From the NCBI RefSeq assembly GCF_963506605.1, contig NC_083276.1:22568001-22632000 (forward strand): a stretch of 64,000 nucleotides of DNA, read 5' to 3'. The DNA comes from Zootoca vivipara (Eukaryota). The notes beneath the pieces are model-generated. The model was not told the origin of the DNA. It saw only the letters and a list, made by a program, of their open reading frames with translations, and made no database searches. Both the position numbers and the translations under genes were made by a program. Shown here one piece after another: positions 17,300-62,813 of the stretch. Each line of letters begins with the position of its first letter. The stretch's first letter is position 1.

Positions 17300-19232
17300 T
17301 ACTCACATTGTTGCTTCTGTTTTGCATATGAGACTATGATGGTACTTCTTTAAATAAAATCAGTGTGAATTTTTGAAATTCAAACAATGTTTATTTGTCT
17401 CAGAAGAAATTGCTAAGCTCTTTGGAAGCTTTGGAATGACATTGTAGAATCAGTGTTTGCATGAAGTTGACAGTATTAGAGTCAGGCCCATTCTACAACA
17501 AGCCAGTTAACTGAAGTACTATAGTTTAATCCCATTACTTTTAGGGGGGGGCAGATAAGTGATTGGGTGGGCAGTTAACTGTGCTGAGCAGCACTTTATT
17601 ATAATTAATGACATCAGCATCTTTGTCACTTCAGAAAGTTGAAGCAAGGGCAATCTCTTTTCCCCCCTCCTACACTTGGGTTTAATTGACAAGCTTTTAG
17701 CTTCCAGCATTGGAAGACCTCTTTTTAATCATTTAATAACATAGCGAAATTGTTTGTGAGATGTTGACCCTGATCAGTGAATATATTTATTTTGTCCTTC
17801 TCTAGCTGAAGGGAAATCTTTTGAGCACCAAGGTTGTCAGGTGTGCCTTATTTTATAATGCAGTGCCTTGCAAATAAGCTCTCAAAATTTAGTAACCTGC
17901 CAAGTTTTGTTTTGTTTTTTCCACTAGTCTTCTGAACATTCTCTCTGCAGAGCACTTTCTCTCAACTCCCATCGCCTGCTAAACCACTGCATGCAGTTCC
18001 TTATCATCTGTGGTTACCAGAAAGAGTGCTTAAATACAGCCTGTGTTCCATATTCCAGAACATTATAACACCACAGAATATAAAGCATCCCTCCTTCCCC
18101 ACCCCCCCACAATTTTTAGAATGCTGCATACAGTTTTGAAGATCTGTTGCTGCAGAATGCTTCTGTCTTGCATGAGCAAGAGTCATGTTTTTTCAAATCA
18201 TTGCCCACAGCCGTTTGCCTGATGGCCAACTAGTTTTGAAACGGCTTTCAAAAGCAGGTTTTAAAGTGGCACTGGGTGCTTCCTGTTCAGAGAAATAAAA
18301 GTGTTGAAGGCGGCTACCTCTATTGAATCAACTTTTGTGGTTCAATATGATTTGCAGACATAGAAGAAAAACATAAAGAGGTTTTAAAGCAAATTGAAAA
18401 TAGGTTTAAAACTACAGAATGAACACCTGTGGCAGAGATTTTTTTTCATCCAGCTGGAAAGACTAGTAGAAGAAAAAAAAATTATTCGATTGTTGCAGAA
18501 AGTACAAATAGTGGACTGCTGTTGTATCTCAGTTGGGATGCTATTACATGGAGAACTAACCTTGCCTCTTAAATGTTTTGAAGTGGGACTTCCTGTAAGC
18601 TTACCCAGGCTTTTGGGACTAGCTCTACCTTTCAAGTCCTAGTACTGTACTTTCCCCTTCTGCAACAGAATTTGAACTCTGGTCTCCCAGGTCCTAGACC
18701 AAAACTATAACCACTTCACCACACTGTCACCCACAGCGTGAAGGAGACTGCCTGTCTCTTAAAGGGGAGCCATATCAGTAATGGTGTACGGTTACGGTAG
18801 TTCCTTTGTATGCAACCCACACAGAAACCAATTGGGATCTCTGTTTGAGAAGATGTGAGCTAGACCCTCGGGTGATTTTTGAGTGTTTCTTGCTTACACC
18901 TTCCTGGTTTTTTTGTGTGTAGTCCTTGAAATGTCTTGGCTTGAATAGTATAGTTCTACATTATTTTGTATATTCAGGAAGATTCTGGGCAGACTCGCAT
19001 TGTAATTTGACACACGTCCTTGACAAGCAGATTGAACTGTCTTCCACTTTGCTACAGCTATCTCTGCAAATTGGGTTTTGATTTTTAAAAAGTTGTTTAT
19101 ATGAAATAGGGTATGGCTTCCTGTATGGTTGGGGGTGAATTTTTTTATTTTTTTTGGAAGAAAGGTTTTTAAAGTACACATACTAACAGGACCTTGTATT
19201 CGGAATCATCTATCTATAGCTATCGTTTATCT

Positions 19233-19618
19233 AAAAAAATTCCTTCCAGTAACACCTTAGAGACCAACTAAGTTTGTCAATGGTATGAGCTTTCGTGTGC
19301 ATGCACACTTCTTCAGATACACTGAAACAGAAGTCACCAGACCCTTATATATACCGTAGTGAGAGGGTGGGGAGGGGTATTACTCAGAAGGGTGGTGGGA
19401 ATGGGTGATTGACTGATAGGTGTGGTAATACCCCTCCCCACCTTCTCACTATATATACCGTAAGGGTCTGGTGACTTCTGTTTCAGTGTATCTGAAGAAG
19501 TGTGCATGCACCCAAAATCTCATATCAATGACAAACTTAGTTGGTCTCTAAGGTGCTACTGGAAGGAATTTTTTAAATTTTGTTTCGACTACATCAGACC
19601 AACACGGCTACCTACCTG
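19233..19618 (+). mobile_element. Penelope-like fold-back element, older copy
   Basis: About 150-bp imperfect inverted arms (19233-19383 and 19425-19574) with the same terminus as the 56.6-kb copy. TSD TATCGTTTATCT/TATCTTTTATCT. Confidence 0.82.
19283..19320 (-). ncRNA. Minimal hammerhead ribozyme motif (intact); the + strand partner at 19488-19525 is decayed
   Basis: The - strand reads GUAUCUGAAGAAGUGUGCAUGCACACGAAAGCUCAUAC with an extendable stem I. The + arm has lost the G of GAAA and has other changes. Confidence 0.72.
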
Positions 19619-20619
19619 TATCTTTTATCTATCCATCTTAAGAATGCAAACAAGAAGAAAAACAGCAACTTAAGCTTCTGAATACTATAAATGACAAACA
19701 ACCCAGTGATGATGATCATTCCCTGAGGAGCTGGTTGTTCTTACCATCTTTTCAAAAACACAGTTGGGGAATATTCATAGTACAACAATTAAATTCGGGG
19801 GGGGGGGGAGGAGTGTGATTACTTTTGCTTGCAAGGCACTGCATCCTTGGTGCACAGGAATTAATTTATTCAGATAAGAGTAGGAAGCACTCAGTTCCCA
19901 TAAAAAATGGAAATGGATGTGATGGCTGAAAGTGTAAATGCCATTAATAATAATAAAAAGATTAGATGTGTTTGTGGAGGACAGATCTATCAGCAGCTCT
20001 TAGCCATGATAATGAAAATTCAGCAGCCTTCTCCAGCTTGGTGTCTTCAAATGCTGTATTTTATTGGAACGATCATCGCTGATCATTAGCAATGCTGGCT
20101 GGGGCAGATGGGATTTCAAAACCATCCCACAATAGGAACTTGTGGAAGAGCTAGGGTGTCCAAAACTGTGAATGAGTTGAGGAGAGGACTTCACCTTTAT
20201 TGCCCTAGACTAGGGATGAGGAGTCTGCGACCCTTCAACTCCCATGATCTTATATCTTTAGCAATACTGGCTGGAATGGATGGGAGTTGGAGTCTAACAT
20301 CGGGAGGGCACCATGAAGGTGCCTATGGGGAAGGGATGGGGAACCTAAGGCCTTCTAGATGTTGTGGGACTCCAAACTCCAGTCATCCCCAGCCAGCCTA
20401 GACAGTGGAGAGCTCTCTGCTATAGTCTTTAATGAAAACAAAAGCAAATAGCTTTCCTACTGTTTCCCTCAGCAGCTGTGTTTCAGATACAGTATTGTGA
20501 AAACATCAACACCTATGCTCCAGCAGCAAGTACTCCTATCTGCACAGCCAACAAGGTGGGAGTAAATACTCTTGTCCGTTTTAGTGTACTGATGCTGTTG
20601 TAAGAATTTTAAGGTTATA

Positions 20620-49232: not shown

Positions 49233-49619
49233 GTCCTGTTTGATGACCTTGGTCCATCGCTAATACAAATTTCCAGCCCAGATCTTCAGTTTCAGCTGCT
49301 CTGCTCGTTTCTGCAATTCTTAGGTGTCCCATGTAGCTGTGGCCTCCTTCCTTCCTTCCTCTACACAGCAATGGATGAGAACAACATCTTTGAGGATCAG
49401 CAGCATGGCCAACGACCTCTGACTTCTTTTGACCTGTCACTTCCTGGAGTCAGTAGAATTGGCCAGATGGGCTCGATGCTCCAAGGAGTTAGACGTATTG
49501 GCCACCCCAAAGAAGGGGAGGAGTTCATACAGAATTTCTTCCATATGATTCTGCCTCTGCTTTCAGGAAAAGAAAAATCCAATCTATCCAACTTTTGGCT
49601 TCAGTATGAAGTCTCTAAG
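49233..49619 (+). CDS. NRDE2: NRDE2 coding exon 10 (VLFDDLG...WLQYEVSK)
   Basis: Boundaries taacag| and |gtaagt. 387 nt, in frame. Confidence 0.94.
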
Positions 49620-50219
49620 GTAAGTTGGGATTTTATTTTTAAATTCTTCTGTCGCCTTGTACGAACAGCAAATGTACAAATATTAGCAAGGCTCCCCCTT
49701 GGCTGCAGCTAAGCCTGGTGAGTGCCTGATTCGGTGACCATCCGGGAACTGTCTTGGGTTCTGTGATGGAACAAGGCAGGATACACTCGTAAAATAATGA
49801 ATCATCTCTGTAACAAACACCAGACACTCTGGGGTGGTTTGCCCTGGCTAGCTGAGGATCCCCTAGAAATTCTAGGATCTAGGCAATAATAGCAAAATAC
49901 ATTTGGGTAAAATTATCCCTAAAGCACTCCAAAAACACGAAGCCATTGAGGTTAACCCTTCCTTTCCTGCCCCCACCCCATAGTTTTGTTTTCCTGCTCT
50001 CCACAATCTTTCCCATCTAGTCAACTGAATTGTCTGGCCTATATCTTGCGACCATTTTATGGTCCTTTCTTTTAGGATCTCTCCTTTCAGTTCCCATTCA
50101 AGAAGTAAATTTTACATTCTTGAGATGATTTTCTTACTTGGTTGAATAAGTTCACTTTGCAGTTTTGAGGTTTTTTTGTTCAAATCCTATTTTCTTATTG
50201 TGGCTAAAGATATGCACTA

Positions 50220-50494: not shown

Positions 50495-51266
50495 CTAGTA
50501 TCATGAAGTCCGTTAAATTAACGGGTGCTAAAATTAATTAGCGGGGTTTCCCCCCCCCCGGTGACTCACCCACCGCCACCACCTCAGCCCCTCACTCAGT
50601 CCCATCCCTGCCCCCCGCCCCAGCCAGCTGCCTCCTCAGCTTCCTCTCTCCCTCCCCATTTCCCACCNNNNNNNNNNNNNNNNNNNNNNNNNNNNNNNNN
50701 NNNNNNNNNNNNNNNNNNNNNNNNNNNNNNNNNNNNNNNNNNNNNNNNNNNNNNNNNNNNNNNNNNNNNNNNNNNNNNNNNNNNNNNNNNNNNNNNNNNC
50801 AGAAGCCCTTCCAACCCCCCCCCCCAAATCCACACACACTTCCAGGGACTAATTCCCCCTTCCCCCGCAGGTGCGCCCGCCCACTCTCCTGCTTTCGCCC
50901 CTCAGTAACGGCTAAACGATCCTTCAGCCCAGCAGCCGCATCACTCGTGGCTTGCACTCTCTCTCTATCCACACCCACCTACCCTCCCTTTCCCTTTCAC
51001 CGGCACACGCCTGCCTCCTCTCCTTCCCCTCTAACGGAGAAGAAACCAGGAGGAAAGAGCGAGATCCTTCCGTAGCACAGCAGAGGCAAGGGGAAGCTGC
51101 ACACTTTTTTTTGTATGGTTGTGTATATGCAAGCATGTAATCTCTCTCACGGTCCTGGTTTATCCCGTCCAAGTCCCAACGGCTGTCCGTGGGGCACATG
51201 CGCAGTAGCGCAATCCCACGGACACAGGGACTGGACGCAGAGACACTTGCACTTTATTATATAGGA
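50495..51266 (-). mobile_element. Non-autonomous Helitron, same family (contains the N gap)
   Basis: Same 5' TCCTATATAATAAAG and 3' hairpin plus CTAG on the - strand. Removing it restores the surrounding L1 frame at an A|T site. Confidence 0.88.
50668..50799. other. Assembly gap (N run) inside the GC-rich Helitron interior
   Basis: Run of n. Confidence 1.
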
Positions 51267-52604: not shown

Positions 52605-52763
52605 TTTTTTTTTCCTGCTCCAGTTCCACCCCCCAGGGGCTTCTACTTGCCAAATGGGGTAAAAGTCCCTAGGCCATGTGAAACTGCTAACAAATAAGCA
52701 AAACAATGAACCTGGTTGTGTTTTTTCTTGGCTGCCTCATTATTATTATTGATTAACATGCAG

Positions 52764-53665
52764 GTTATTCAGTGTTTGGAAACAGGCAACAAAAAGAAAC
52801 TGAAATGGCAAGGGAAGAGAAGTAAGAAATTAGCCAAGAACCTTCTTAAGACCCATGAGAACAGAAACGATGTCTCCCTTTGGCGACTCTACGCCTACCT
52901 GGAGTGGTTGCTTGGCAACGTGGAAGATGCTAGGAAAGTTTTTGATATGTCTCTGAGCACGGCGGGAACAGCTGGGATCCAGAACCCCCAGCTCTGTAAC
53001 CTGGGCCTGCTTTATGCCGAACTGGAAGCAGAGTCGCTGGGGAGCCTGGAGGGAACGCTCGAGTCTCGCGCTGTTCACATATTGACCAGGCTGGCCGAGC
53101 AAGGACCTTACGCGCCTTACAGTGGACAGACATTATCCGTGAACATTTTGAGAGCTCGGAAAACATACGAGCATCTTCTCCAGGATTACTTGAGCAAGAG
53201 AGGCGCCTCTGAACAAGAACAGATCCACGACTACTCCGACCACCTCGTTGGCTTGGTTGGTTGTTACACCCTTTTCCAGTATTTGACTCTTGGGATTGAT
53301 TCTGCAGTGTCAGTATACAGGCAGGTTTTTGAGAAGCTGGAAGGCGAAAGCCCTGGCGGTCAGAACTGTGCCGCCACCCTTGAAGCTGTCGCCCTGATGC
53401 ATGTGCATTTGCTCAGATACCACATGAGAACGAGCGTCTATCCTTTGGCTCCCCTCCGCGAAGCACTGCTGGGGGCTTTGAAGAGGTATCCTAGCAACCA
53501 GCCTCTCTGGAGGGCATATATCCAGATCCAAAGCAAGTCGCACAACGCTAGCAAAGCGCGGCGGTTTTTTGACAGCGTTGCAAGGGCCGCGAAGTCACTG
53601 GAGCCGTGGCTGTTTGCAATCAAAGCTGAGCAGATGAGGAAAAAGCTTGTGGAAAGTGTGCAAAG
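52764..53665 (+). CDS. NRDE2: NRDE2 coding exon 11 (902 nt, HAT/TPR-like helical region)
   Basis: Long open frame (ORF 52716-53669) with NRDE2-like peptide. Boundaries atgcag| and |gtaaca. Confidence 0.93.
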
Positions 53666-54628
53666 GTAACACTGCATCTTACAGATGATGCATTTCTCTC
53701 TCTCTCTTGCTTCTTAATTGGCACAGGCCTGTTCCCCTTTGCAAAAGTTAATTTCATTTCTACGTGACATTTGTATCCTGCCCCTCCTTCAAGGAGCTCT
53801 GGCTAGTCTTTTAAATCTCCTCTGAGATTTGATTTGCTTCATGGCGAAGTGGAGATTCAGGCACAGATTTTCCACGTCAAACATAGGCTGTTGCCTTATA
53901 TTGAGTCTGACCTCTAACTGGTAGCAACTTTCCAGGGTTCTAGGCAAGAGAAATTATCAGCCCTTCTTGGAGCTGCTTGGTTTTGAACCTGGGATGCCAT
54001 ACCCCTTCCCCAGTGCTTAAAGCATTTCTATATTGCATTGTTGATTTCTGCAGGGTTACATCCACTTGCATTTATTCTGTTGTCACAAACATGTCCTCCA
54101 ACAGCCTTCCCCAGCCGTCCAGATTATTTATTTTGCATTCCTCTACATCACCTTTTGCAAAAAAAACCCAAACAAAAAAACCCTGACTTCCCAACAGGTT
54201 GCACCAGAACAAAACATATTAATAGGAATTACAGAAAGCAGATAAAAATGCAATTAAAATCCAGTTTCATACTGGCAGTCGGTATAAAATATAGAAGGAC
54301 TAAAGCCTGGGAAAAGTGAAATTAAACTAAAAAGGACCTCAGAAAGGTTGGGAGCGCAAGTAAGTCTTCACCATGTGACAGAAATCAATCAGGGTTATGG
54401 CTATCTGCATATCCATGGGAAGGGAGTTCCATGACTGGGTGCCACCACGAAGAATGCCTCGCTGTGTGTTACCACACAACCAAGGTTGTCGGACTACAGT
54501 TCTCGTTATTTATGACCATTGGCCAACCTGGATGGGGCTAATGGAAGTTGGGAGGCCAGAATAATCTGGTGAGCCTGAGGCTGGGGAGGCCTGCTCTACA
54601 GTATAACAATAATTTAAGAGAGCACTAT

Positions 54629-54979: not shown

Positions 54980-55473
54980 TATGGCAGGGTGTGAGCTTGG
55001 ACTGGAAACTTGTTGGCCAACCTTGGCCCAGTTACCTCCTCAGCCTAACCTAACCTAACATGTAGGGATGTTGAGACGACAACATGCAGAGGAGGAGGAT
55101 GCTCTATGCTGCTCTGAGCTTGCTGGAGGATTAAAGCAGCAGCATAGGATTGCATGCAAAGATTAACATGTGTGTTCATGCCCCATGACGTTCCTATCCT
55201 CTTCTCCCCGGTGGTCTTCCGCTCATACATTTGGATGCAACCAAGGGGCCACCACTCGGTTGGGTAGAGCACATCCTTTGTATGCTGAGGATCCAGAGGG
55301 CATCTCCACCTCCACCAGGTGACAGGAAAGACTCAGCACCTCATGTAGCTCTTGGGGGCAAAAAGGTTGCCCACCTCTGCTCTCAAAATCTCCAGTGTGA
55401 GTTTGTACTGGAAGGAAGAACCATGTTCATGACCACCGAAAACACTGTTTGTTCTCGTTTTTCTTTGTTTCAG

Positions 55474-55612
55474 AGTAGCCACTGGCGATGTGTATGCAAC
55501 CATCCCCGAAACTGGGTTAACCAATCGAATCAAGGCTTTATTTGAACATGCCATTGAGACTGAAAACGGTGCTCATTGTCCATTGCTTTGGAGGCTATAT
55601 ATATACTTTATG
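55474..55612 (+). CDS. NRDE2: NRDE2 coding exon 12 (IPETGLTNRIKALFEHA...CPLLWR)
   Basis: Boundaries tttcag| and |gtgaga. Phase 2 to 0. Confidence 0.94.
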
Positions 55613-56091
55613 GTGAGAGACTGCAGCCCCCCCCCCCTGCACTTAATTTTATTAAGTGATTCTTGGATGCTGTTGTGTAGATTAGAAGCTATAGAAAAGT
55701 AACATTTAAAAATGCACCGTAGGGATGTTAATGCAAATCCTTAACATTGTTAGATTATTAGAAAACCTTTTTGTGTAAAAAAAATATATGGCTCAGCTCC
55801 CTATCTTCATGTAAGGAGGGCAGTAATTTTTGACAGCTCCCCCTCCTGACCATTCCCAGTTGAGTTAGGATATAGACAGCCTAAATATTCATAGATGTTG
55901 TATCACATCATATAATATTAATATACAGTTCTCCCTAGAGAAGATGTCTCCCTAGAGAAATTCTCAGTCTGAATATTTAATGGTTCCTTCTTCAATTCTA
56001 AATGAAAATAATGTTTATGTACATAGAGTTCTGCATTAAAATTTTTTTAAAGTATGCTTGAAATGCAAAACTTTTGTCTCATTCTTTTCAG

Positions 56092-56163
56092 GTTTCTTTA
56101 GGAGATAAAGGAAAAAGTAAAGGAGTGTTTTATAGAGCGCTTCAAAACTGCCCCTGGACAAAA
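56092..56163 (+). CDS. NRDE2: NRDE2 coding exon 13 (SKGVFYRALQNCPWTK)
   Basis: Boundaries tttcag| and |gtaggt. Conserved ALQNCPW motif. Confidence 0.94.
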
Positions 56164-56673
56164 GTAGGTTTCTTTTTTAAGCAACAACAACAGCAATAAT
56201 ATTTATAATTGTTCAAGAATACAGTGACAATGCAATAGAACATGTGTCTCTGCTAGGGTCAGACCAGATTCCTGATTATTTGCATAGCTGGTAAAATGGA
56301 ACTATTGTTTATAATGGACAGTAGGTTGCAACAGGTTTCTGCAACAGTATGGTGTTTTTTTTTTTATATAAAAAGAAACTGCCCAGAAAGCAGAGAAACT
56401 GAAGAGTAAATCTATGAAATATATAGTCAAAGGAACAGAGATTTAAAAGTTTACATGACCAGTGTCTAATATACAGTCATACCTCGGGTTTAGTATGCTT
56501 CAGGTTGAGTACTTTCAAGTTAAGTACTCCGCGACCCGTCTGGAACGGATTAATCTACTTTCCATTACTTTCAATGGGAAAGTTACAGGTAGGTAGCCGT
56601 GTTGGTCTGAGTCGAAGCAAAATAAAAAAATTCCTTCAGTAGCACCTTAAAGACCAACTAAGTTTATATTTTG

Positions 56674-56711
56674 GTATGAGCTTTCGTGTGCATGCACACT
56701 TCTTCAGATAC
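56674..56711 (-). ncRNA. Minimal type I hammerhead ribozyme motif (antisense arm)
   Basis: Exact reverse complement of 56751-56788. Confidence 0.75.
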
Positions 56712-56750
56712 CCCTTCTCTACATAAGTGCCTGGGGACTCCTATTTCACT

Positions 56751-56788
56751 GTATCTGAAGAAGTGTGCATGCACACGAAAGCTCATAC
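56751..56788 (+). ncRNA. Minimal type I hammerhead ribozyme motif (sense to NRDE2 intron 13)
   Basis: GUAU-CUGAAGA-A-GUGUG(CAUG)CACAC-GAAA-GCUC^AUAC: intact CUGANGA/GAAA core, stems I and II, and a palindromic AGCU stem III. Confidence 0.75.
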
Positions 56789-57398
56789 CAAAATATAAAC
56801 TTAGTTGGTCTTTAAGGTGCTACTGAAGGAATTTTTTTATTTTGTTTCAATGGGAAAGTTCGCTTGAGGTTAAGTACGCTTGAGGTTAAGTACAGACTTC
56901 CAGAACCAATTAAGTACTTAACCTGAGGTACCACTTTACTGTGAATTATTCCTGATTCTTGACAAGTTTGGTTTTAATTGGACTTGGTGGGGATTTTCCC
57001 AAGCATTTCTTCATGACCTATAACACAGCAAATTCTTATGTTTAATTTCTTTCGATGCAAAACTTTGGGCATACAGAATTGGAATTATTTTTTATTTAGT
57101 TTTTTATGGTCCAGACTCGAGAGGCTTGGAGGGTGGGAGCACCAGAAGGCATAGGAGCAAGGACGCGAGATCTGCAGCACCGTGGAAGGGAGCTGTACCC
57201 ACCTATCCTAAAAAAGCTTAGTTACCTTGATCGCTTTTTATTTCATTAGAGCTAGGGTGTGTCTTTTTCTTTTTCTTCTCTGCATTTTTTGCTGACCACT
57301 CTGTGGCCCTGAATTTGTTCTCTTGTCAAATGGATTCCTGGCCTGACTTGTGCTGTTCCATAAGCATGGCGGATTGATTATTTTCAATGTATTTGTAG

Positions 57399-57524
57399 GT
57401 GCTGTATATGGATGCTATAAGCTATTTTCCAGATGAGCTGCAAGAGATCCTTGATCTAATGACCGAGAAGGAGCTGAGAGTGCGGGTACCAATTGAAGAG
57501 CTGGAGCTGCTCTTGGAAGACTAG
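57399..57524 (+). CDS. NRDE2: NRDE2 last coding exon 14 (VLYMDA...EKELRVRVPIEELELLLED*)
   Basis: Acceptor ttgtag|. Conserved C-terminus. TAG at 57522-57524. Confidence 0.95.
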   Translation: MLYMDAISYFPDELQEILDLMTEKELRVRVPIEELELLLED

Positions 57525-58319
57525 AGAATGATGTGAAGACAGCAAGTGGACCTTGGCTTGAGCCTTCAGTCTCTGCCCCTGGAGAGAAAATAATTATACA
57601 CTTCCTTTAACAGATGAGAAACTATTTTTCAGCACAGCTTTCTTGTGGTTGGTTTCCCCAGTGCTGTTAAGTGCTCTTGTGCAGCAAACTGCCAATATGG
57701 GTGACTCGATCTGTTGCTGTCGTCGGACATCGTCACATGCATTTGTGTGATTATACAGTAGCCAAAGGACAAGCCATTCTCTCTCAGCTGATAGATGCAT
57801 GAACACATGATCAGAATAGTTTTATAGGTTGTACAGAACATGAAAATGTGCCCTTGCGTGATGACTCACGTGATGTTTTAGGCAGCAAAGCCTTGTGTAA
57901 CCAAATTTTTATTGGTTTGTAAATGGCAGAGGATGTAAATATGCTTGTAAAGGTACATAAAATATTTTTGAAATGGATTTTATTTCTATATCTCCCCCCC
58001 CCCCAAAAGGCGGAAACACTTAAGCTCTGCTTTTAGTGAATCTTTCCTTGTTGCACCTGTGGAATTTAACATGGTCACACAGCTGCCAATTCACATGCCA
58101 CACTCAACAGTAATTTTGAACCCTCCCAGCATATGTATTGTATGAAATTGTTTCCTATTCATTTCAGAAGTTTGGGCTACCCACTACTGAAATCAGGTGG
58201 GATGTTAAGAATTGCGAATGAGGATGCACACAGGTTGGCAGGTAAGATTTTGAAAAAGTAAATGCTAAGCCAGGCTTGTGGAATAGAGCTGCATATCCGA
58301 GCGTTGTTGGTTGTAAAAG

Positions 58320-62561: not shown

Positions 62562-62813
<252 letters not shown>

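What the first reader, a model, noticed from the sequence alone, without database searches (positions are those of the whole stretch)
56569..56860. Self-masked hammerhead ribozyme hairpin freshly inserted in the last NRDE2 intron
Seen: a 260-bp insert with a perfect 16-bp TSD and two perfectly complementary 94-bp arms around a 39-nt spacer. Each strand carries one intact minimal hammerhead (CUGAAGA-A, stem II GUGUG/CACAC, GAAA, GCUC^AUAC; predicted cut after 56784 on +). Known: Penelope-like elements carry minimal type I hammerheads whose stem III shrinks to a palindrome (here AGCU) and which cleave efficiently as dimers. Inference: in either transcription direction the antisense arm is made first, so it should sequester the ribozyme. 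The NRDE2 pre-mRNA would then carry a latent ribozyme inside a 94-bp perfect dsRNA that could be an ADAR or Dicer substrate, in a gene itself linked to nuclear RNAi and RNA surveillance. Zero divergence between arms and between TSDs suggests a very recent, possibly polymorphic insertion.
Basis: partly seen in the sequence, partly recalled or inferred. Interest (0 to 1): 0.8.

Follow-up and report, generated by a model that had tools for sequence, protein, structure and literature searches.

The report
Ordinary Penelope-like retrotransposon hairpin insertion
The 260-bp hairpin with a hammerhead motif in the last NRDE2 intron is real, but it is a standard miniature insertion of a very abundant Penelope-like retrotransposon, and its head-to-head shape comes from how these elements integrate, not from any design to mask the ribozyme.

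Summary
There is a 260-bp insert (56585-56844) between perfect 16-bp target-site duplications. It has two perfectly complementary 94-nt arms, and each strand carries one minimal type I hammerhead motif (cut after 56784 on +). It lies in the last coding intron of NRDE2, a + strand gene.

It is a textbook Penelope-like element (PLE) mini-insertion. Two 5'-truncated copies of the element's 3' region are joined head to head. A 29-33-nt "tail" is present at the left end only. An older copy of the same family at 19234-19619 has the same layout. Published work describes this layout and explains it by priming on both nicked DNA strands from two reverse-transcription start sites.

- The PLE sits inside a very high-copy SINE-like repeat. 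RNA reads from other copies of that repeat give the exact empty site.
- Rfam finds no hammerhead.
- No read ends pile up at the cut site, and there is no A-to-G excess.
- Presence/absence among individuals could not be resolved.
- Zero divergence only bounds the age to under about 5-14 Myr.
- Masking by the hairpin is thermodynamically certain but trivial.
- The NRDE2 link is most likely coincidence.

Unchecked first-reader notes from this scan report similar PLE hairpins elsewhere in this genome.

The parts
56569..56584 (.). Left target-site duplication, TTTCAATGGGAAAGTT
   Evidence: It is identical to 56845-56860. RNA reads from uninterrupted copies of the host repeat join 56568 directly to 56845, with 16 nt fitting either side (table 5).
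56585..56711 (-). 5'-truncated PLE copy, sense on the - strand (127 nt), running from the first base of hammerhead helix I to the element's full 3' end including the tail
   Evidence: Alignment A1 with the 19-kb copy. The terminal 25 nt are identical to 19595-19619.
56585..56613 (-). PLE 'tail': a 29-nt AC-rich extension (33 nt if counted up to 56617), present at this end of the insert only
   Evidence: It is absent from the right arm. It matches the 30-40-bp one-sided tail described for PLEs (PMC8557442; PMC11167929).
56674..56711 (-). Minimal type I hammerhead motif on the - strand (predicted cut after 56678, reading 5'->3' on -)
   Evidence: Descriptor hit and exact match.
56712..56844 (+). 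Second 5'-truncated PLE copy, sense on the + strand (133 nt), without a tail
   Evidence: Alignment A1.
56712..56750 (+). It is element sequence upstream of the hammerhead, belonging to the + copy
   Evidence: It aligns with 19425-19480 of the other copy. In the DNA runs the commonest letters at 56740 and 56749 equal the 19-kb copy's letters (table 3).
56751..56788 (+). Minimal type I hammerhead motif: helix I GUAU/AUAC, CUGAAGA, bulged A, helix II GUGUG(CAUG)CACAC, GAAA, AGCU palindrome, C17. Predicted cut after 56784
   Evidence: No Rfam hammerhead hit.
56845..56860 (.). Right target-site duplication
56420..56955 (.). Host repeat: a very high-copy, transcribed SINE-like element into which the PLE inserted (approximate borders)
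   Evidence: Summed contig depth jumps from about 30-50 to 10^5-10^6 between these places. Unique contigs stop at 56513-56521 and resume at 56909-56910 (tables 2 and 8).
56086..56175 (+). Penultimate NRDE2 coding exon (approximate; tblastn extent)
57399..57524 (+). Last NRDE2 coding exon, ending in a stop codon
19234..19619 (+). Older insertion of the same PLE family with the same head-to-head layout: arms of about 150 nt, 139 identical positions over 153 aligned columns, tail at the right end only, TSD 11/12 (19222-19233 and 19620-19631). The left-arm hammerhead is intact and the right-arm one is decayed

Best explanation
This is a miniature insertion of a Penelope-like retrotransposon, or of a short non-autonomous derivative that uses the PLE machinery.

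Inferred origin: the element's endonuclease made two nicks 16 bp apart in an intronic SINE-like repeat. Reverse transcription was then primed from both nicked strands. One start was at the site that includes the 29-33-nt tail (left end). The other was at the internal, tail-less site in the U-rich stretch (right end). Both cDNAs stopped after about 130 nt and were joined 5' end to 5' end.

The result is a 260-bp head-to-head pair flanked by a 16-bp TSD. Each copy carries the hammerhead that sits in the PLE terminal repeat, so each DNA strand encodes one ribozyme motif.

In the NRDE2 pre-mRNA the insert would fold into a 94-bp perfect hairpin. The single minimal hammerhead is expected to be inert there, both because it is buried in the hairpin and because such ribozymes do not cleave as monomers. 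The insertion lies about 420 nt from the donor and about 555 nt from the acceptor. It is most likely a neutral intronic passenger.

Shown here: the anatomy, family membership by architecture, the empty site, the gene context and the energetics. Inferred: the two-strand priming mechanism (from the published in vitro work) and neutrality.
For: - Perfect arms and TSD.
- The spacer aligns to element sequence, and the tail is present at one end only, with 25/25 identity to the other copy's end.
- The second family copy at 19234-19619 has the same head-to-head layout, a one-sided tail and a 12-bp TSD.
- Among the 15 joints listed of 696 (table 5), twelve lead from the left arm into the right arm at other positions in the DNA runs. 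This indicates that head-to-head copies are common in the genome.
- The exact empty-site joint 56568->56845, with 16 shared letters, appears in 561 RNA reads from other copies of the host repeat. Loose ends at 56584 and 56845 continue with the host-repeat sequence (tables 5 and 7).
- Literature on layout: PLE insertions are highly 5'-truncated, often have an inverted 5'-truncated copy next to them, and carry a 30-40-bp tail at one end only, with the hammerhead in the pLTR (PMC8557442).
- Literature on mechanism: the Anolis PLE protein cleaves and extends both DNA strands. It starts reverse transcription at two adjacent internal sites, and the sequence between them is the tail (PMC11167929).
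- Literature on the ribozyme: minimal PLE hammerheads have a 4-5-bp helix I, an unpaired base 5' of helix II and no helix III loop. They are inactive as monomers (PMC4209133).
- Energetics: hairpin -168.3 kcal/mol against -6.8 to -7.6 kcal/mol for the ribozyme fold.
Against: - No full-length copy with a reverse transcriptase and GIY-YIG endonuclease ORF of this family was seen, so the link to an autonomous PLE rests on architecture and the hammerhead type.
- The sequence differs from the one lizard PLE whose sequence I could read, Poseidon_Ac.
- Rfam's hammerhead models do not score the motif.
- Two-strand priming has been shown only in vitro, and for another family.
- Neutrality is assumed, not measured. 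The sampled RNA run had no reads on the unique intron flanks.
Confidence: 0.9

Rival explanations
1. The hairpin is a latent, self-masked ribozyme that matters for NRDE2: its 94-bp dsRNA is edited by ADAR or diced, or the ribozyme cuts the pre-mRNA when unmasked.
For: The hairpin would certainly form if the intron is transcribed. By general knowledge, long perfect intronic inverted repeats are ADAR substrates. Family RNA is abundant in the RNA run (table 2).
Against: - Each transcript holds only one minimal hammerhead, and monomers are reported to be inactive (PMC4209133).
- No read-end pile appears at 56784/56785 or 56678/56677 in the RNA run. Changes are symmetric (A>G 15 and T>C 17 against G>A 16 and C>T 16 places), so there is no editing signature.
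- Depth on the unique intron flanks was zero, so nothing locus-specific is known.
- The layout is a by-product of integration and recurs at unrelated sites.
- The family's very high copy number makes a hit in NRDE2 unremarkable.
Confidence: 0.06
2. It is not a truncated autonomous PLE but a copy of a short non-autonomous, retrozyme-like or SINE-like element. Such an element would consist only of the hammerhead-bearing terminal module and would be mobilised in trans by PLE proteins.
For: Both copies in the window are short (260 and 386 bp) and no ORF is attached. The frame opened by the ATG in loop II closes after 9 codons (read). A 2026 preprint argues that animal retrozymes are non-autonomous PLE derivatives. 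An unchecked note from this scan reports tandem 138-nt hammerhead units in this genome.
Against: Extreme 5' truncation of autonomous PLEs gives the same picture (PMC8557442). No tandem units occur at this locus. The 19-kb copy extends at least 170 nt upstream of the hammerhead without repeating. The rival changes the name of the source RNA, not the mechanism.
Confidence: 0.3
3. It is a foldback or MITE-type DNA transposon, or an assembly palindrome artefact.
For: The long perfect inverted arms look superficially like a foldback element or a chimeric-read artefact.
Against: - The ends are not inverted repeats of each other. The left end carries 29-33 extra nt, and the arms start inside the insert.
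- TSD length differs between copies (16 against 12).
- The outward-facing ends are the element's 3' ends, as expected for target-primed reverse transcription.
- An artefact would not create a TSD or reproduce the family's exact terminus.
- The older copy with diverged arms shows that such structures exist and age in the genome.
Confidence: 0.02

Closest known systems
Penelope-like element insertions with an adjacent inverted 5'-truncated copy and a one-sided 30-40-bp tail (Evgen'ev & Arkhipova 2005 and Arkhipova 2006, as summarised in Craig et al. 2021, PMC8557442)
   Same: Strong 5' truncation, head-to-head inverted copy, tail at one end only, hammerhead in the terminal repeat, and TSDs that differ between the two copies (16 and 12 bp).
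   Different: This copy is an extreme miniature (127 + 133 nt) with no ORF or direct pLTR. No autonomous parent was identified here.
Poseidon_Ac (PAc) of Anolis carolinensis, characterised in vitro (PMC11167929)
   Same: It is a lizard PLE. Its protein nicks and extends both DNA strands. Reverse transcription starts at two adjacent internal sites whose interval is the tail. The AC-rich start region lies 111-118 nt after the start of helix II. Here the tail-bearing end lies 115 nt after the start of helix II, by my count. Its hammerhead has a short palindromic helix III (ACGU there, AGCU here).
   Different: The sequence is unrelated at the level I could check. Three 10-12-nt motifs of this element were not found in a search of the paper's supplementary files (the GenBank file prints sequence in spaced blocks of 10, so that blank is weak). 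Reading the Poseidon_Ac record shows a different hammerhead sequence. In PAc the ORF starts at helix II. Here that frame closes after 9 codons.
Minimal PLE hammerheads (min-HHR; Cervera & de la Pena 2014, PMC4209133; Lunse et al. 2017, cited in PMC6765202)
   Same: Type I topology, an intact core (CUGANGA ... GAAA ... H), a 4-5-bp helix I, an unpaired base 5' of helix II, and helix III reduced to a palindrome that can pair only between two ribozymes.
   Different: Helix II is 5-6 bp here, against 7-8 bp in the Schistosoma examples. In a head-to-head pair the two motifs lie on opposite strands, so unlike tandem pLTRs they cannot dimerise within one transcript.
L1 twin-priming inversions (recalled from general knowledge, not checked here)
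   Same: The second nick primes reverse transcription, giving an inverted 5' part within one TSD-flanked insertion.
   Different: Twin priming yields adjacent, non-overlapping parts of one RNA. Here both arms copy the same region, so the product is a true hairpin.
Intronic inverted-repeat transposon pairs as dsRNA sources, for example inverted Alu pairs edited by ADAR (general knowledge)
   Same: A long intramolecular duplex within a pre-mRNA intron.
   Different: It is formed in a single insertion event, not by two independent insertions. No editing evidence was obtained.

Membership tests
Penelope-like element (PLE) insertion | Hammerhead ribozyme motif in the terminal (pLTR) region | tested here: met
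   Descriptor hits at 56755-56784 (+), 56707-56678 (-) and 19316-19287 (-), against 0.005 expected.
Penelope-like element (PLE) insertion | Frequent 5' truncation with an inverted 5'-truncated copy directly adjacent | tested here: met
   Both family copies in the window are head-to-head pairs. Many arm-to-arm joints appear in three DNA runs.
Penelope-like element (PLE) insertion | A 30-40-bp tail extension present at one end only | tested here: met
   A 29-33-nt extension at 56585-56613/17 only. The same terminus occurs at 19595-19619 only.
Penelope-like element (PLE) insertion | Target-site duplication of variable length | tested here: met
   16/16 at this locus and 11/12 at the 19-kb locus. 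The empty site is confirmed by reads from paralogous host repeats.
Penelope-like element (PLE) insertion | Full-length members encode a reverse transcriptase plus a GIY-YIG endonuclease | not tested
   I did not look for such an ORF. Neither family copy has one attached. The rest of the genome is not readable with these tools.
Poseidon_Ac family (Anolis carolinensis) | Sequence similarity of the hammerhead/terminal region | tested here: not met
   The Poseidon_Ac record read has a different hammerhead (…CUGAGGAUGCC…GGGCGAAACGUC). Motif look-ups in the supplementary files were blank. It is the same kind of element but not this family.
Hammerhead ribozyme, type I (Rfam models) | Scores against a curated covariance model | tested here: not met
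   No hammerhead family is listed at the gathering score or at E<=10, even for the 56-nt arm alone. I expect this for motifs that lack a helix III hairpin (my reasoning, not tested), but it remains a failed test.
Hammerhead ribozyme, type I (Rfam models) | Conserved core C3 U4 G5 A6 N7 G8 A9 / G12 A13 A14 / A15.1-U16.1 / H17 | tested here: met
   Read directly from 56755-56784. One extra A lies between A9 and helix II.
Hammerhead ribozyme, type I (Rfam models) | Self-cleavage at H17 | not testable with these tools
   In the one RNA run laid there is no pile of read starts or ends at the predicted site (table 6). That is weak negative evidence only.
Minimal PLE hammerhead (Cervera & de la Pena 2014) | Helix I of 4-5 bp, an unpaired base 5' of helix II, and helix III replaced by a short palindrome | tested here: met
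   GUAU/AUAC (5 bp on the - copy), bulged A56762 and the AGCU palindrome. Features as listed in PMC4209133.
Minimal PLE hammerhead (Cervera & de la Pena 2014) | Core better conserved than flanks across family copies | tested here: inconclusive
   Of four arms in the window, three have identical intact motifs and one has decayed. None of the 41 variable places listed for the DNA and RNA runs falls in 56674-56711 or 56751-56788, but 57 further places were not shown, and reads were selected at 90% likeness or more.

The most novel reading that the evidence does not exclude
Head-to-head PLE mini-insertions, created in one step as perfect hairpins, could be a systematic source of intronic dsRNA in this lizard. 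They might yield endo-siRNA, be edited by ADAR, or seed miRNA-like loci. The obligatory 'antisense arm first' geometry of two-strand priming might let hammerhead-bearing copies persist inside genes without cutting host transcripts. Nothing here shows this. It is only not excluded.
Probability: 0.06. Interest if true: 0.45.

Novelty: already known. Interest (0 to 1): 0.15.

Why it matters
It matters little as a discovery. Both the hammerhead type and the inverted, one-tailed layout are published hallmarks of Penelope-like elements, and the element is very abundant in this genome.

The locus does have modest value as a clean, undecayed natural example. Its two outer ends correspond to the tail-bearing and tail-less termini expected from the two reverse-transcription start sites found in vitro for an Anolis PLE. 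The exact empty site is recoverable from paralogous host repeats.

It is also a warning for annotation. Such hairpins draw miRNA-precursor hits from covariance models (61.9 bits to MIR1222, below its cut-off of 90), while the real ribozyme motif goes unreported.

Tried and rejected
- **Rfam.** I ran it on the whole window at the gathering score, on 601 nt at E<=10, and on the 56-nt arm alone. No hammerhead was listed, only generic miRNA-hairpin matches below their cut-offs.
- **Pattern scan of metagenome contigs.** I anchored it outside the ribozyme to collect independent family copies. It gave one 22-nt match (L001) with no hammerhead upstream, which I judged to be chance. No family census was possible.
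- **Presence/absence among individuals.** Logan contigs of three DNA runs all break inside the host repeat, at 56513-56521 and 56909-56910. No record bridges the insert or the empty site at this locus. The 'skips 276' joint comes from other copies of the host repeat, not from an empty allele.
- **Locus-specific RNA evidence (editing, expression).** Depth on the unique intron flanks was zero in the sampled 6% of the RNA run.
- **Search for a paralogous empty site inside the window.** None was found at 3 mismatches or fewer.
- **Identity with Poseidon_Ac.** Rejected after reading the record.
- **Lunse et al. 2017 (PMC5785218).**
- **Spliced NRDE2 model.** I did not build one. Exons were searched one by one by reference, and homologues were mapped onto the window by tblastn. 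The joined step was left out.
- **N run near 50.7 kb.** It was left untouched.

Full report
**What is there**

A 260-bp insert (56585-56844) lies between two identical 16-bp copies of TTTCAATGGGAAAGTT (56569-56584 and 56845-56860). It contains two arms, 56618-56711 and 56751-56844, that are 94/94 complementary, with 39 nt between them. The repeat finder extends the arms to 98 nt with one mismatch. The first four letters of the right TSD (TTTC) resemble the element's next letters, which are GCTTC in the left copy and GTTTC in the other family copy. About a quarter of the family depth in the runs carries the T form.

**The hammerhead**

On the + strand, 56751-56788 reads GUAU-CUGAAGA-A-GUGUG(CAUG)CACAC-GAAA-GCUC^AUAC.
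- All core positions are present.
- Helix I has 4 bp, or 5 bp on the - strand copy.
- There is an extra unpaired A before helix II.
- Helix III is reduced to the palindrome AGCU.

A descriptor I wrote for this minimal type finds exactly three hits in the 64-kb window: both arms here, and one arm of a second copy at 19 kb. Shuffles give 0.005.

Cervera & de la Pena list the same features for the minimal hammerheads of Penelope-like elements (PMC4209133). Rfam's covariance models do not report any hammerhead, even at E<=10 on the isolated arm. I think this reflects the missing helix III hairpin, but it stands as a failed test. What Rfam does report are miRNA-precursor models matching the generic hairpin, below their cut-offs.

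**What the insert really is**

A second insertion of the same family lies at 19234-19619. It is also a head-to-head pair, and older. Its arms share 139 identical positions over 153 aligned columns, and its TSD is 11/12. Aligning the four half-copies (A1) shows three things.
1. The commonest letters in the DNA runs at 56740 and 56749 are those of the 19-kb copy.
2. The left 29-33 nt of the insert (56585-56613/17) is the element's true 3' end. Its last 25 nt are identical to 19595-19619.
3. In both loci this end piece occurs at one end only.

The insert is therefore two 5'-truncated copies of the same 3' region joined 5' to 5'. One is a - strand copy of 127 nt with the tail. The other is a + strand copy of 133 nt without it.

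**Match to the literature**

Craig et al. describe PLE insertions as highly 5'-truncated. They often have an inverted 5'-truncated copy next to them and a 30-40-bp tail at only one end, with the hammerhead in the pLTR (PMC8557442). The in vitro study of the Anolis element Poseidon_Ac reports the following (PMC11167929).
- The protein nicks and extends both DNA strands.
- Reverse transcription starts at two adjacent internal sites, and the interval between them is the tail.
- The start region is AC-rich and lies 111-118 nt after the start of helix II.
- The ribozyme cleaved only with protein present, and was not needed for insertion.
- No RNA-seq read ends were seen at its cut site.

At this locus the tail-bearing end lies 115 nt after the start of helix II and is AC-rich. 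The tail-less end lies in the U-rich stretch 33 nt upstream. The family itself is not Poseidon_Ac, because the published record has a different hammerhead sequence.

My reading is that both nicks primed reverse transcription, one from each start site, and that the two short cDNAs were joined in the middle. This also explains why the antisense arm always comes first in either transcription direction: 3' ends face outward by construction.

**Context**

The gene is NRDE2. The 317-aa exon at 52716-53666 matches NRDE2 proteins at E 1e-132 to 1e-143, and Atlas leads agree. Homologues map to exons at 49371-49691, 52761-53666, 55472-55615, 56086-56175 and 57399-57494, with the stop at 57522-57524. The insert is thus in the last coding intron. 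It lies about 420 nt from the donor and about 555 nt from the acceptor. I searched exons singly by reference and built no joined model.

The PLE did not land in unique DNA. It sits inside a SINE-like repeat of very high copy number (about 56420-56955).

**Reads**

One RNA run (raw reads) and three DNA runs (contigs) of the same organism were laid on 55750-57750.
- Summed contig depth rises from about 5-50 on the unique flanks to 10^5-10^6 over the repeat and the PLE, so both are very abundant. The tool warns that this is not a copy number.
- 561 RNA reads join 56568 directly to 56845, with 16 letters fitting either side. Loose ends at 56584 and 56845 continue with host-repeat sequence. These reads come from other, uninterrupted copies of the host repeat. 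They give the exact empty site, confirming the borders and the 16-bp TSD.
- Twelve of the fifteen listed contig joints lead from the left arm into the right arm at other positions, and 681 further joints were not shown. Head-to-head copies therefore appear to be common in the genome.
- Unique contigs of all three DNA runs end at 56513-56521 and resume at 56909-56910. Presence or absence at this locus cannot be judged.
- The RNA run has no reads on the unique intron flanks. It shows no pile of read ends at either predicted cut site, and transitions are symmetric (A>G 15 and T>C 17, against G>A 16 and C>T 16 places). There is therefore no sign of cleavage or of A-to-I editing, but also no locus-specific power.

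**Energetics and masking**

The + strand insert folds at -168.3 kcal/mol, and the - strand at -165.8. The hammerhead fold of the isolated arm is worth -6.8 to -7.6 kcal/mol. Masking is therefore certain on thermodynamic grounds, but it adds little.
- A lone minimal hammerhead showed no detectable cleavage in vitro (PMC4209133).
- Dimer activity is described as low (PMC4209133, PMC6765202).
- In a head-to-head pair the two motifs lie on opposite strands, so no transcript holds two.

**Age**

Zero differences over 94 + 16 compared positions give a 95% upper bound of about 4.5-14 Myr for assumed rates of 1-3e-9 per site per year. These rates are my assumption. The insertion is younger than the 19-kb copy, but 'very recent' and 'polymorphic' are not shown.

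**Verdict**

The thing is a known kind of object, a Penelope-like element mini-insertion in its usual hairpin form, and it most likely landed in NRDE2 by chance. Two unchecked first-reader notes from this scan report similar PLE hairpins or modules elsewhere in the same genome. Interest is low.

Noticed in passing
window 19234-19619: A second, older head-to-head insertion of the same PLE family, with the tail at the right end and a TSD of 11/12. Five of the eight substitutions between its arms fall within 17 nt of the right-arm hammerhead (CACACGAAAGCTCATACCA became CACCCAAAATCTCATATCA), including the CpG at G12.
   Followed up: yes
window 56420-56955: The host of the PLE is a very high-copy SINE-like repeat with short internal direct repeats (TTCAGGTTAAGTAC-like units). 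It is well represented in the RNA run, with about an 8:1 strand bias. I did not name the family.
   Followed up: partly
window 56763-56776 (and 56686-56699): Helix II plus its loop (GUGUGCAUGCACAC) is a perfect 14-nt palindrome. In a two-molecule fold the minimum-energy dimer (-32.2 kcal/mol) pairs helix II between the molecules rather than the AGCU stub. Whether this helps or hinders the productive dimer is unknown.
   Followed up: no
window 56621-56821, RNA run X21: Family RNA shows a consistent strand bias of about 3.5-4:1 that flips between the two arms. Transcripts are therefore mostly of one element strand. Which strand depends on the library type, which is not on record (table 2).
   Followed up: no
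window 62562-62789 (- strand): This ORF ends in ...[24 protein letters not shown] and has a weak AAA+ lid hit. It looks like the last exon of a proteasome AAA-ATPase gene converging on NRDE2 tail to tail. From memory it is PSMC1, the neighbour of NRDE2 in human; I did not check this.
   Followed up: partly
window about 50690-50830: A run of N (seen as X in the ORF translations) inside a proline-rich, GC-rich stretch.
   Followed up: no
L001 1470-1530 (metagenome contig Ga0181537_10089593): A 22-nt exact match to the element's AACTTAGTTGGTCTCTAAGGTG, with CGAAA about 25 nt upstream but no CUGANGA. I judged it to be chance.
   Followed up: partly
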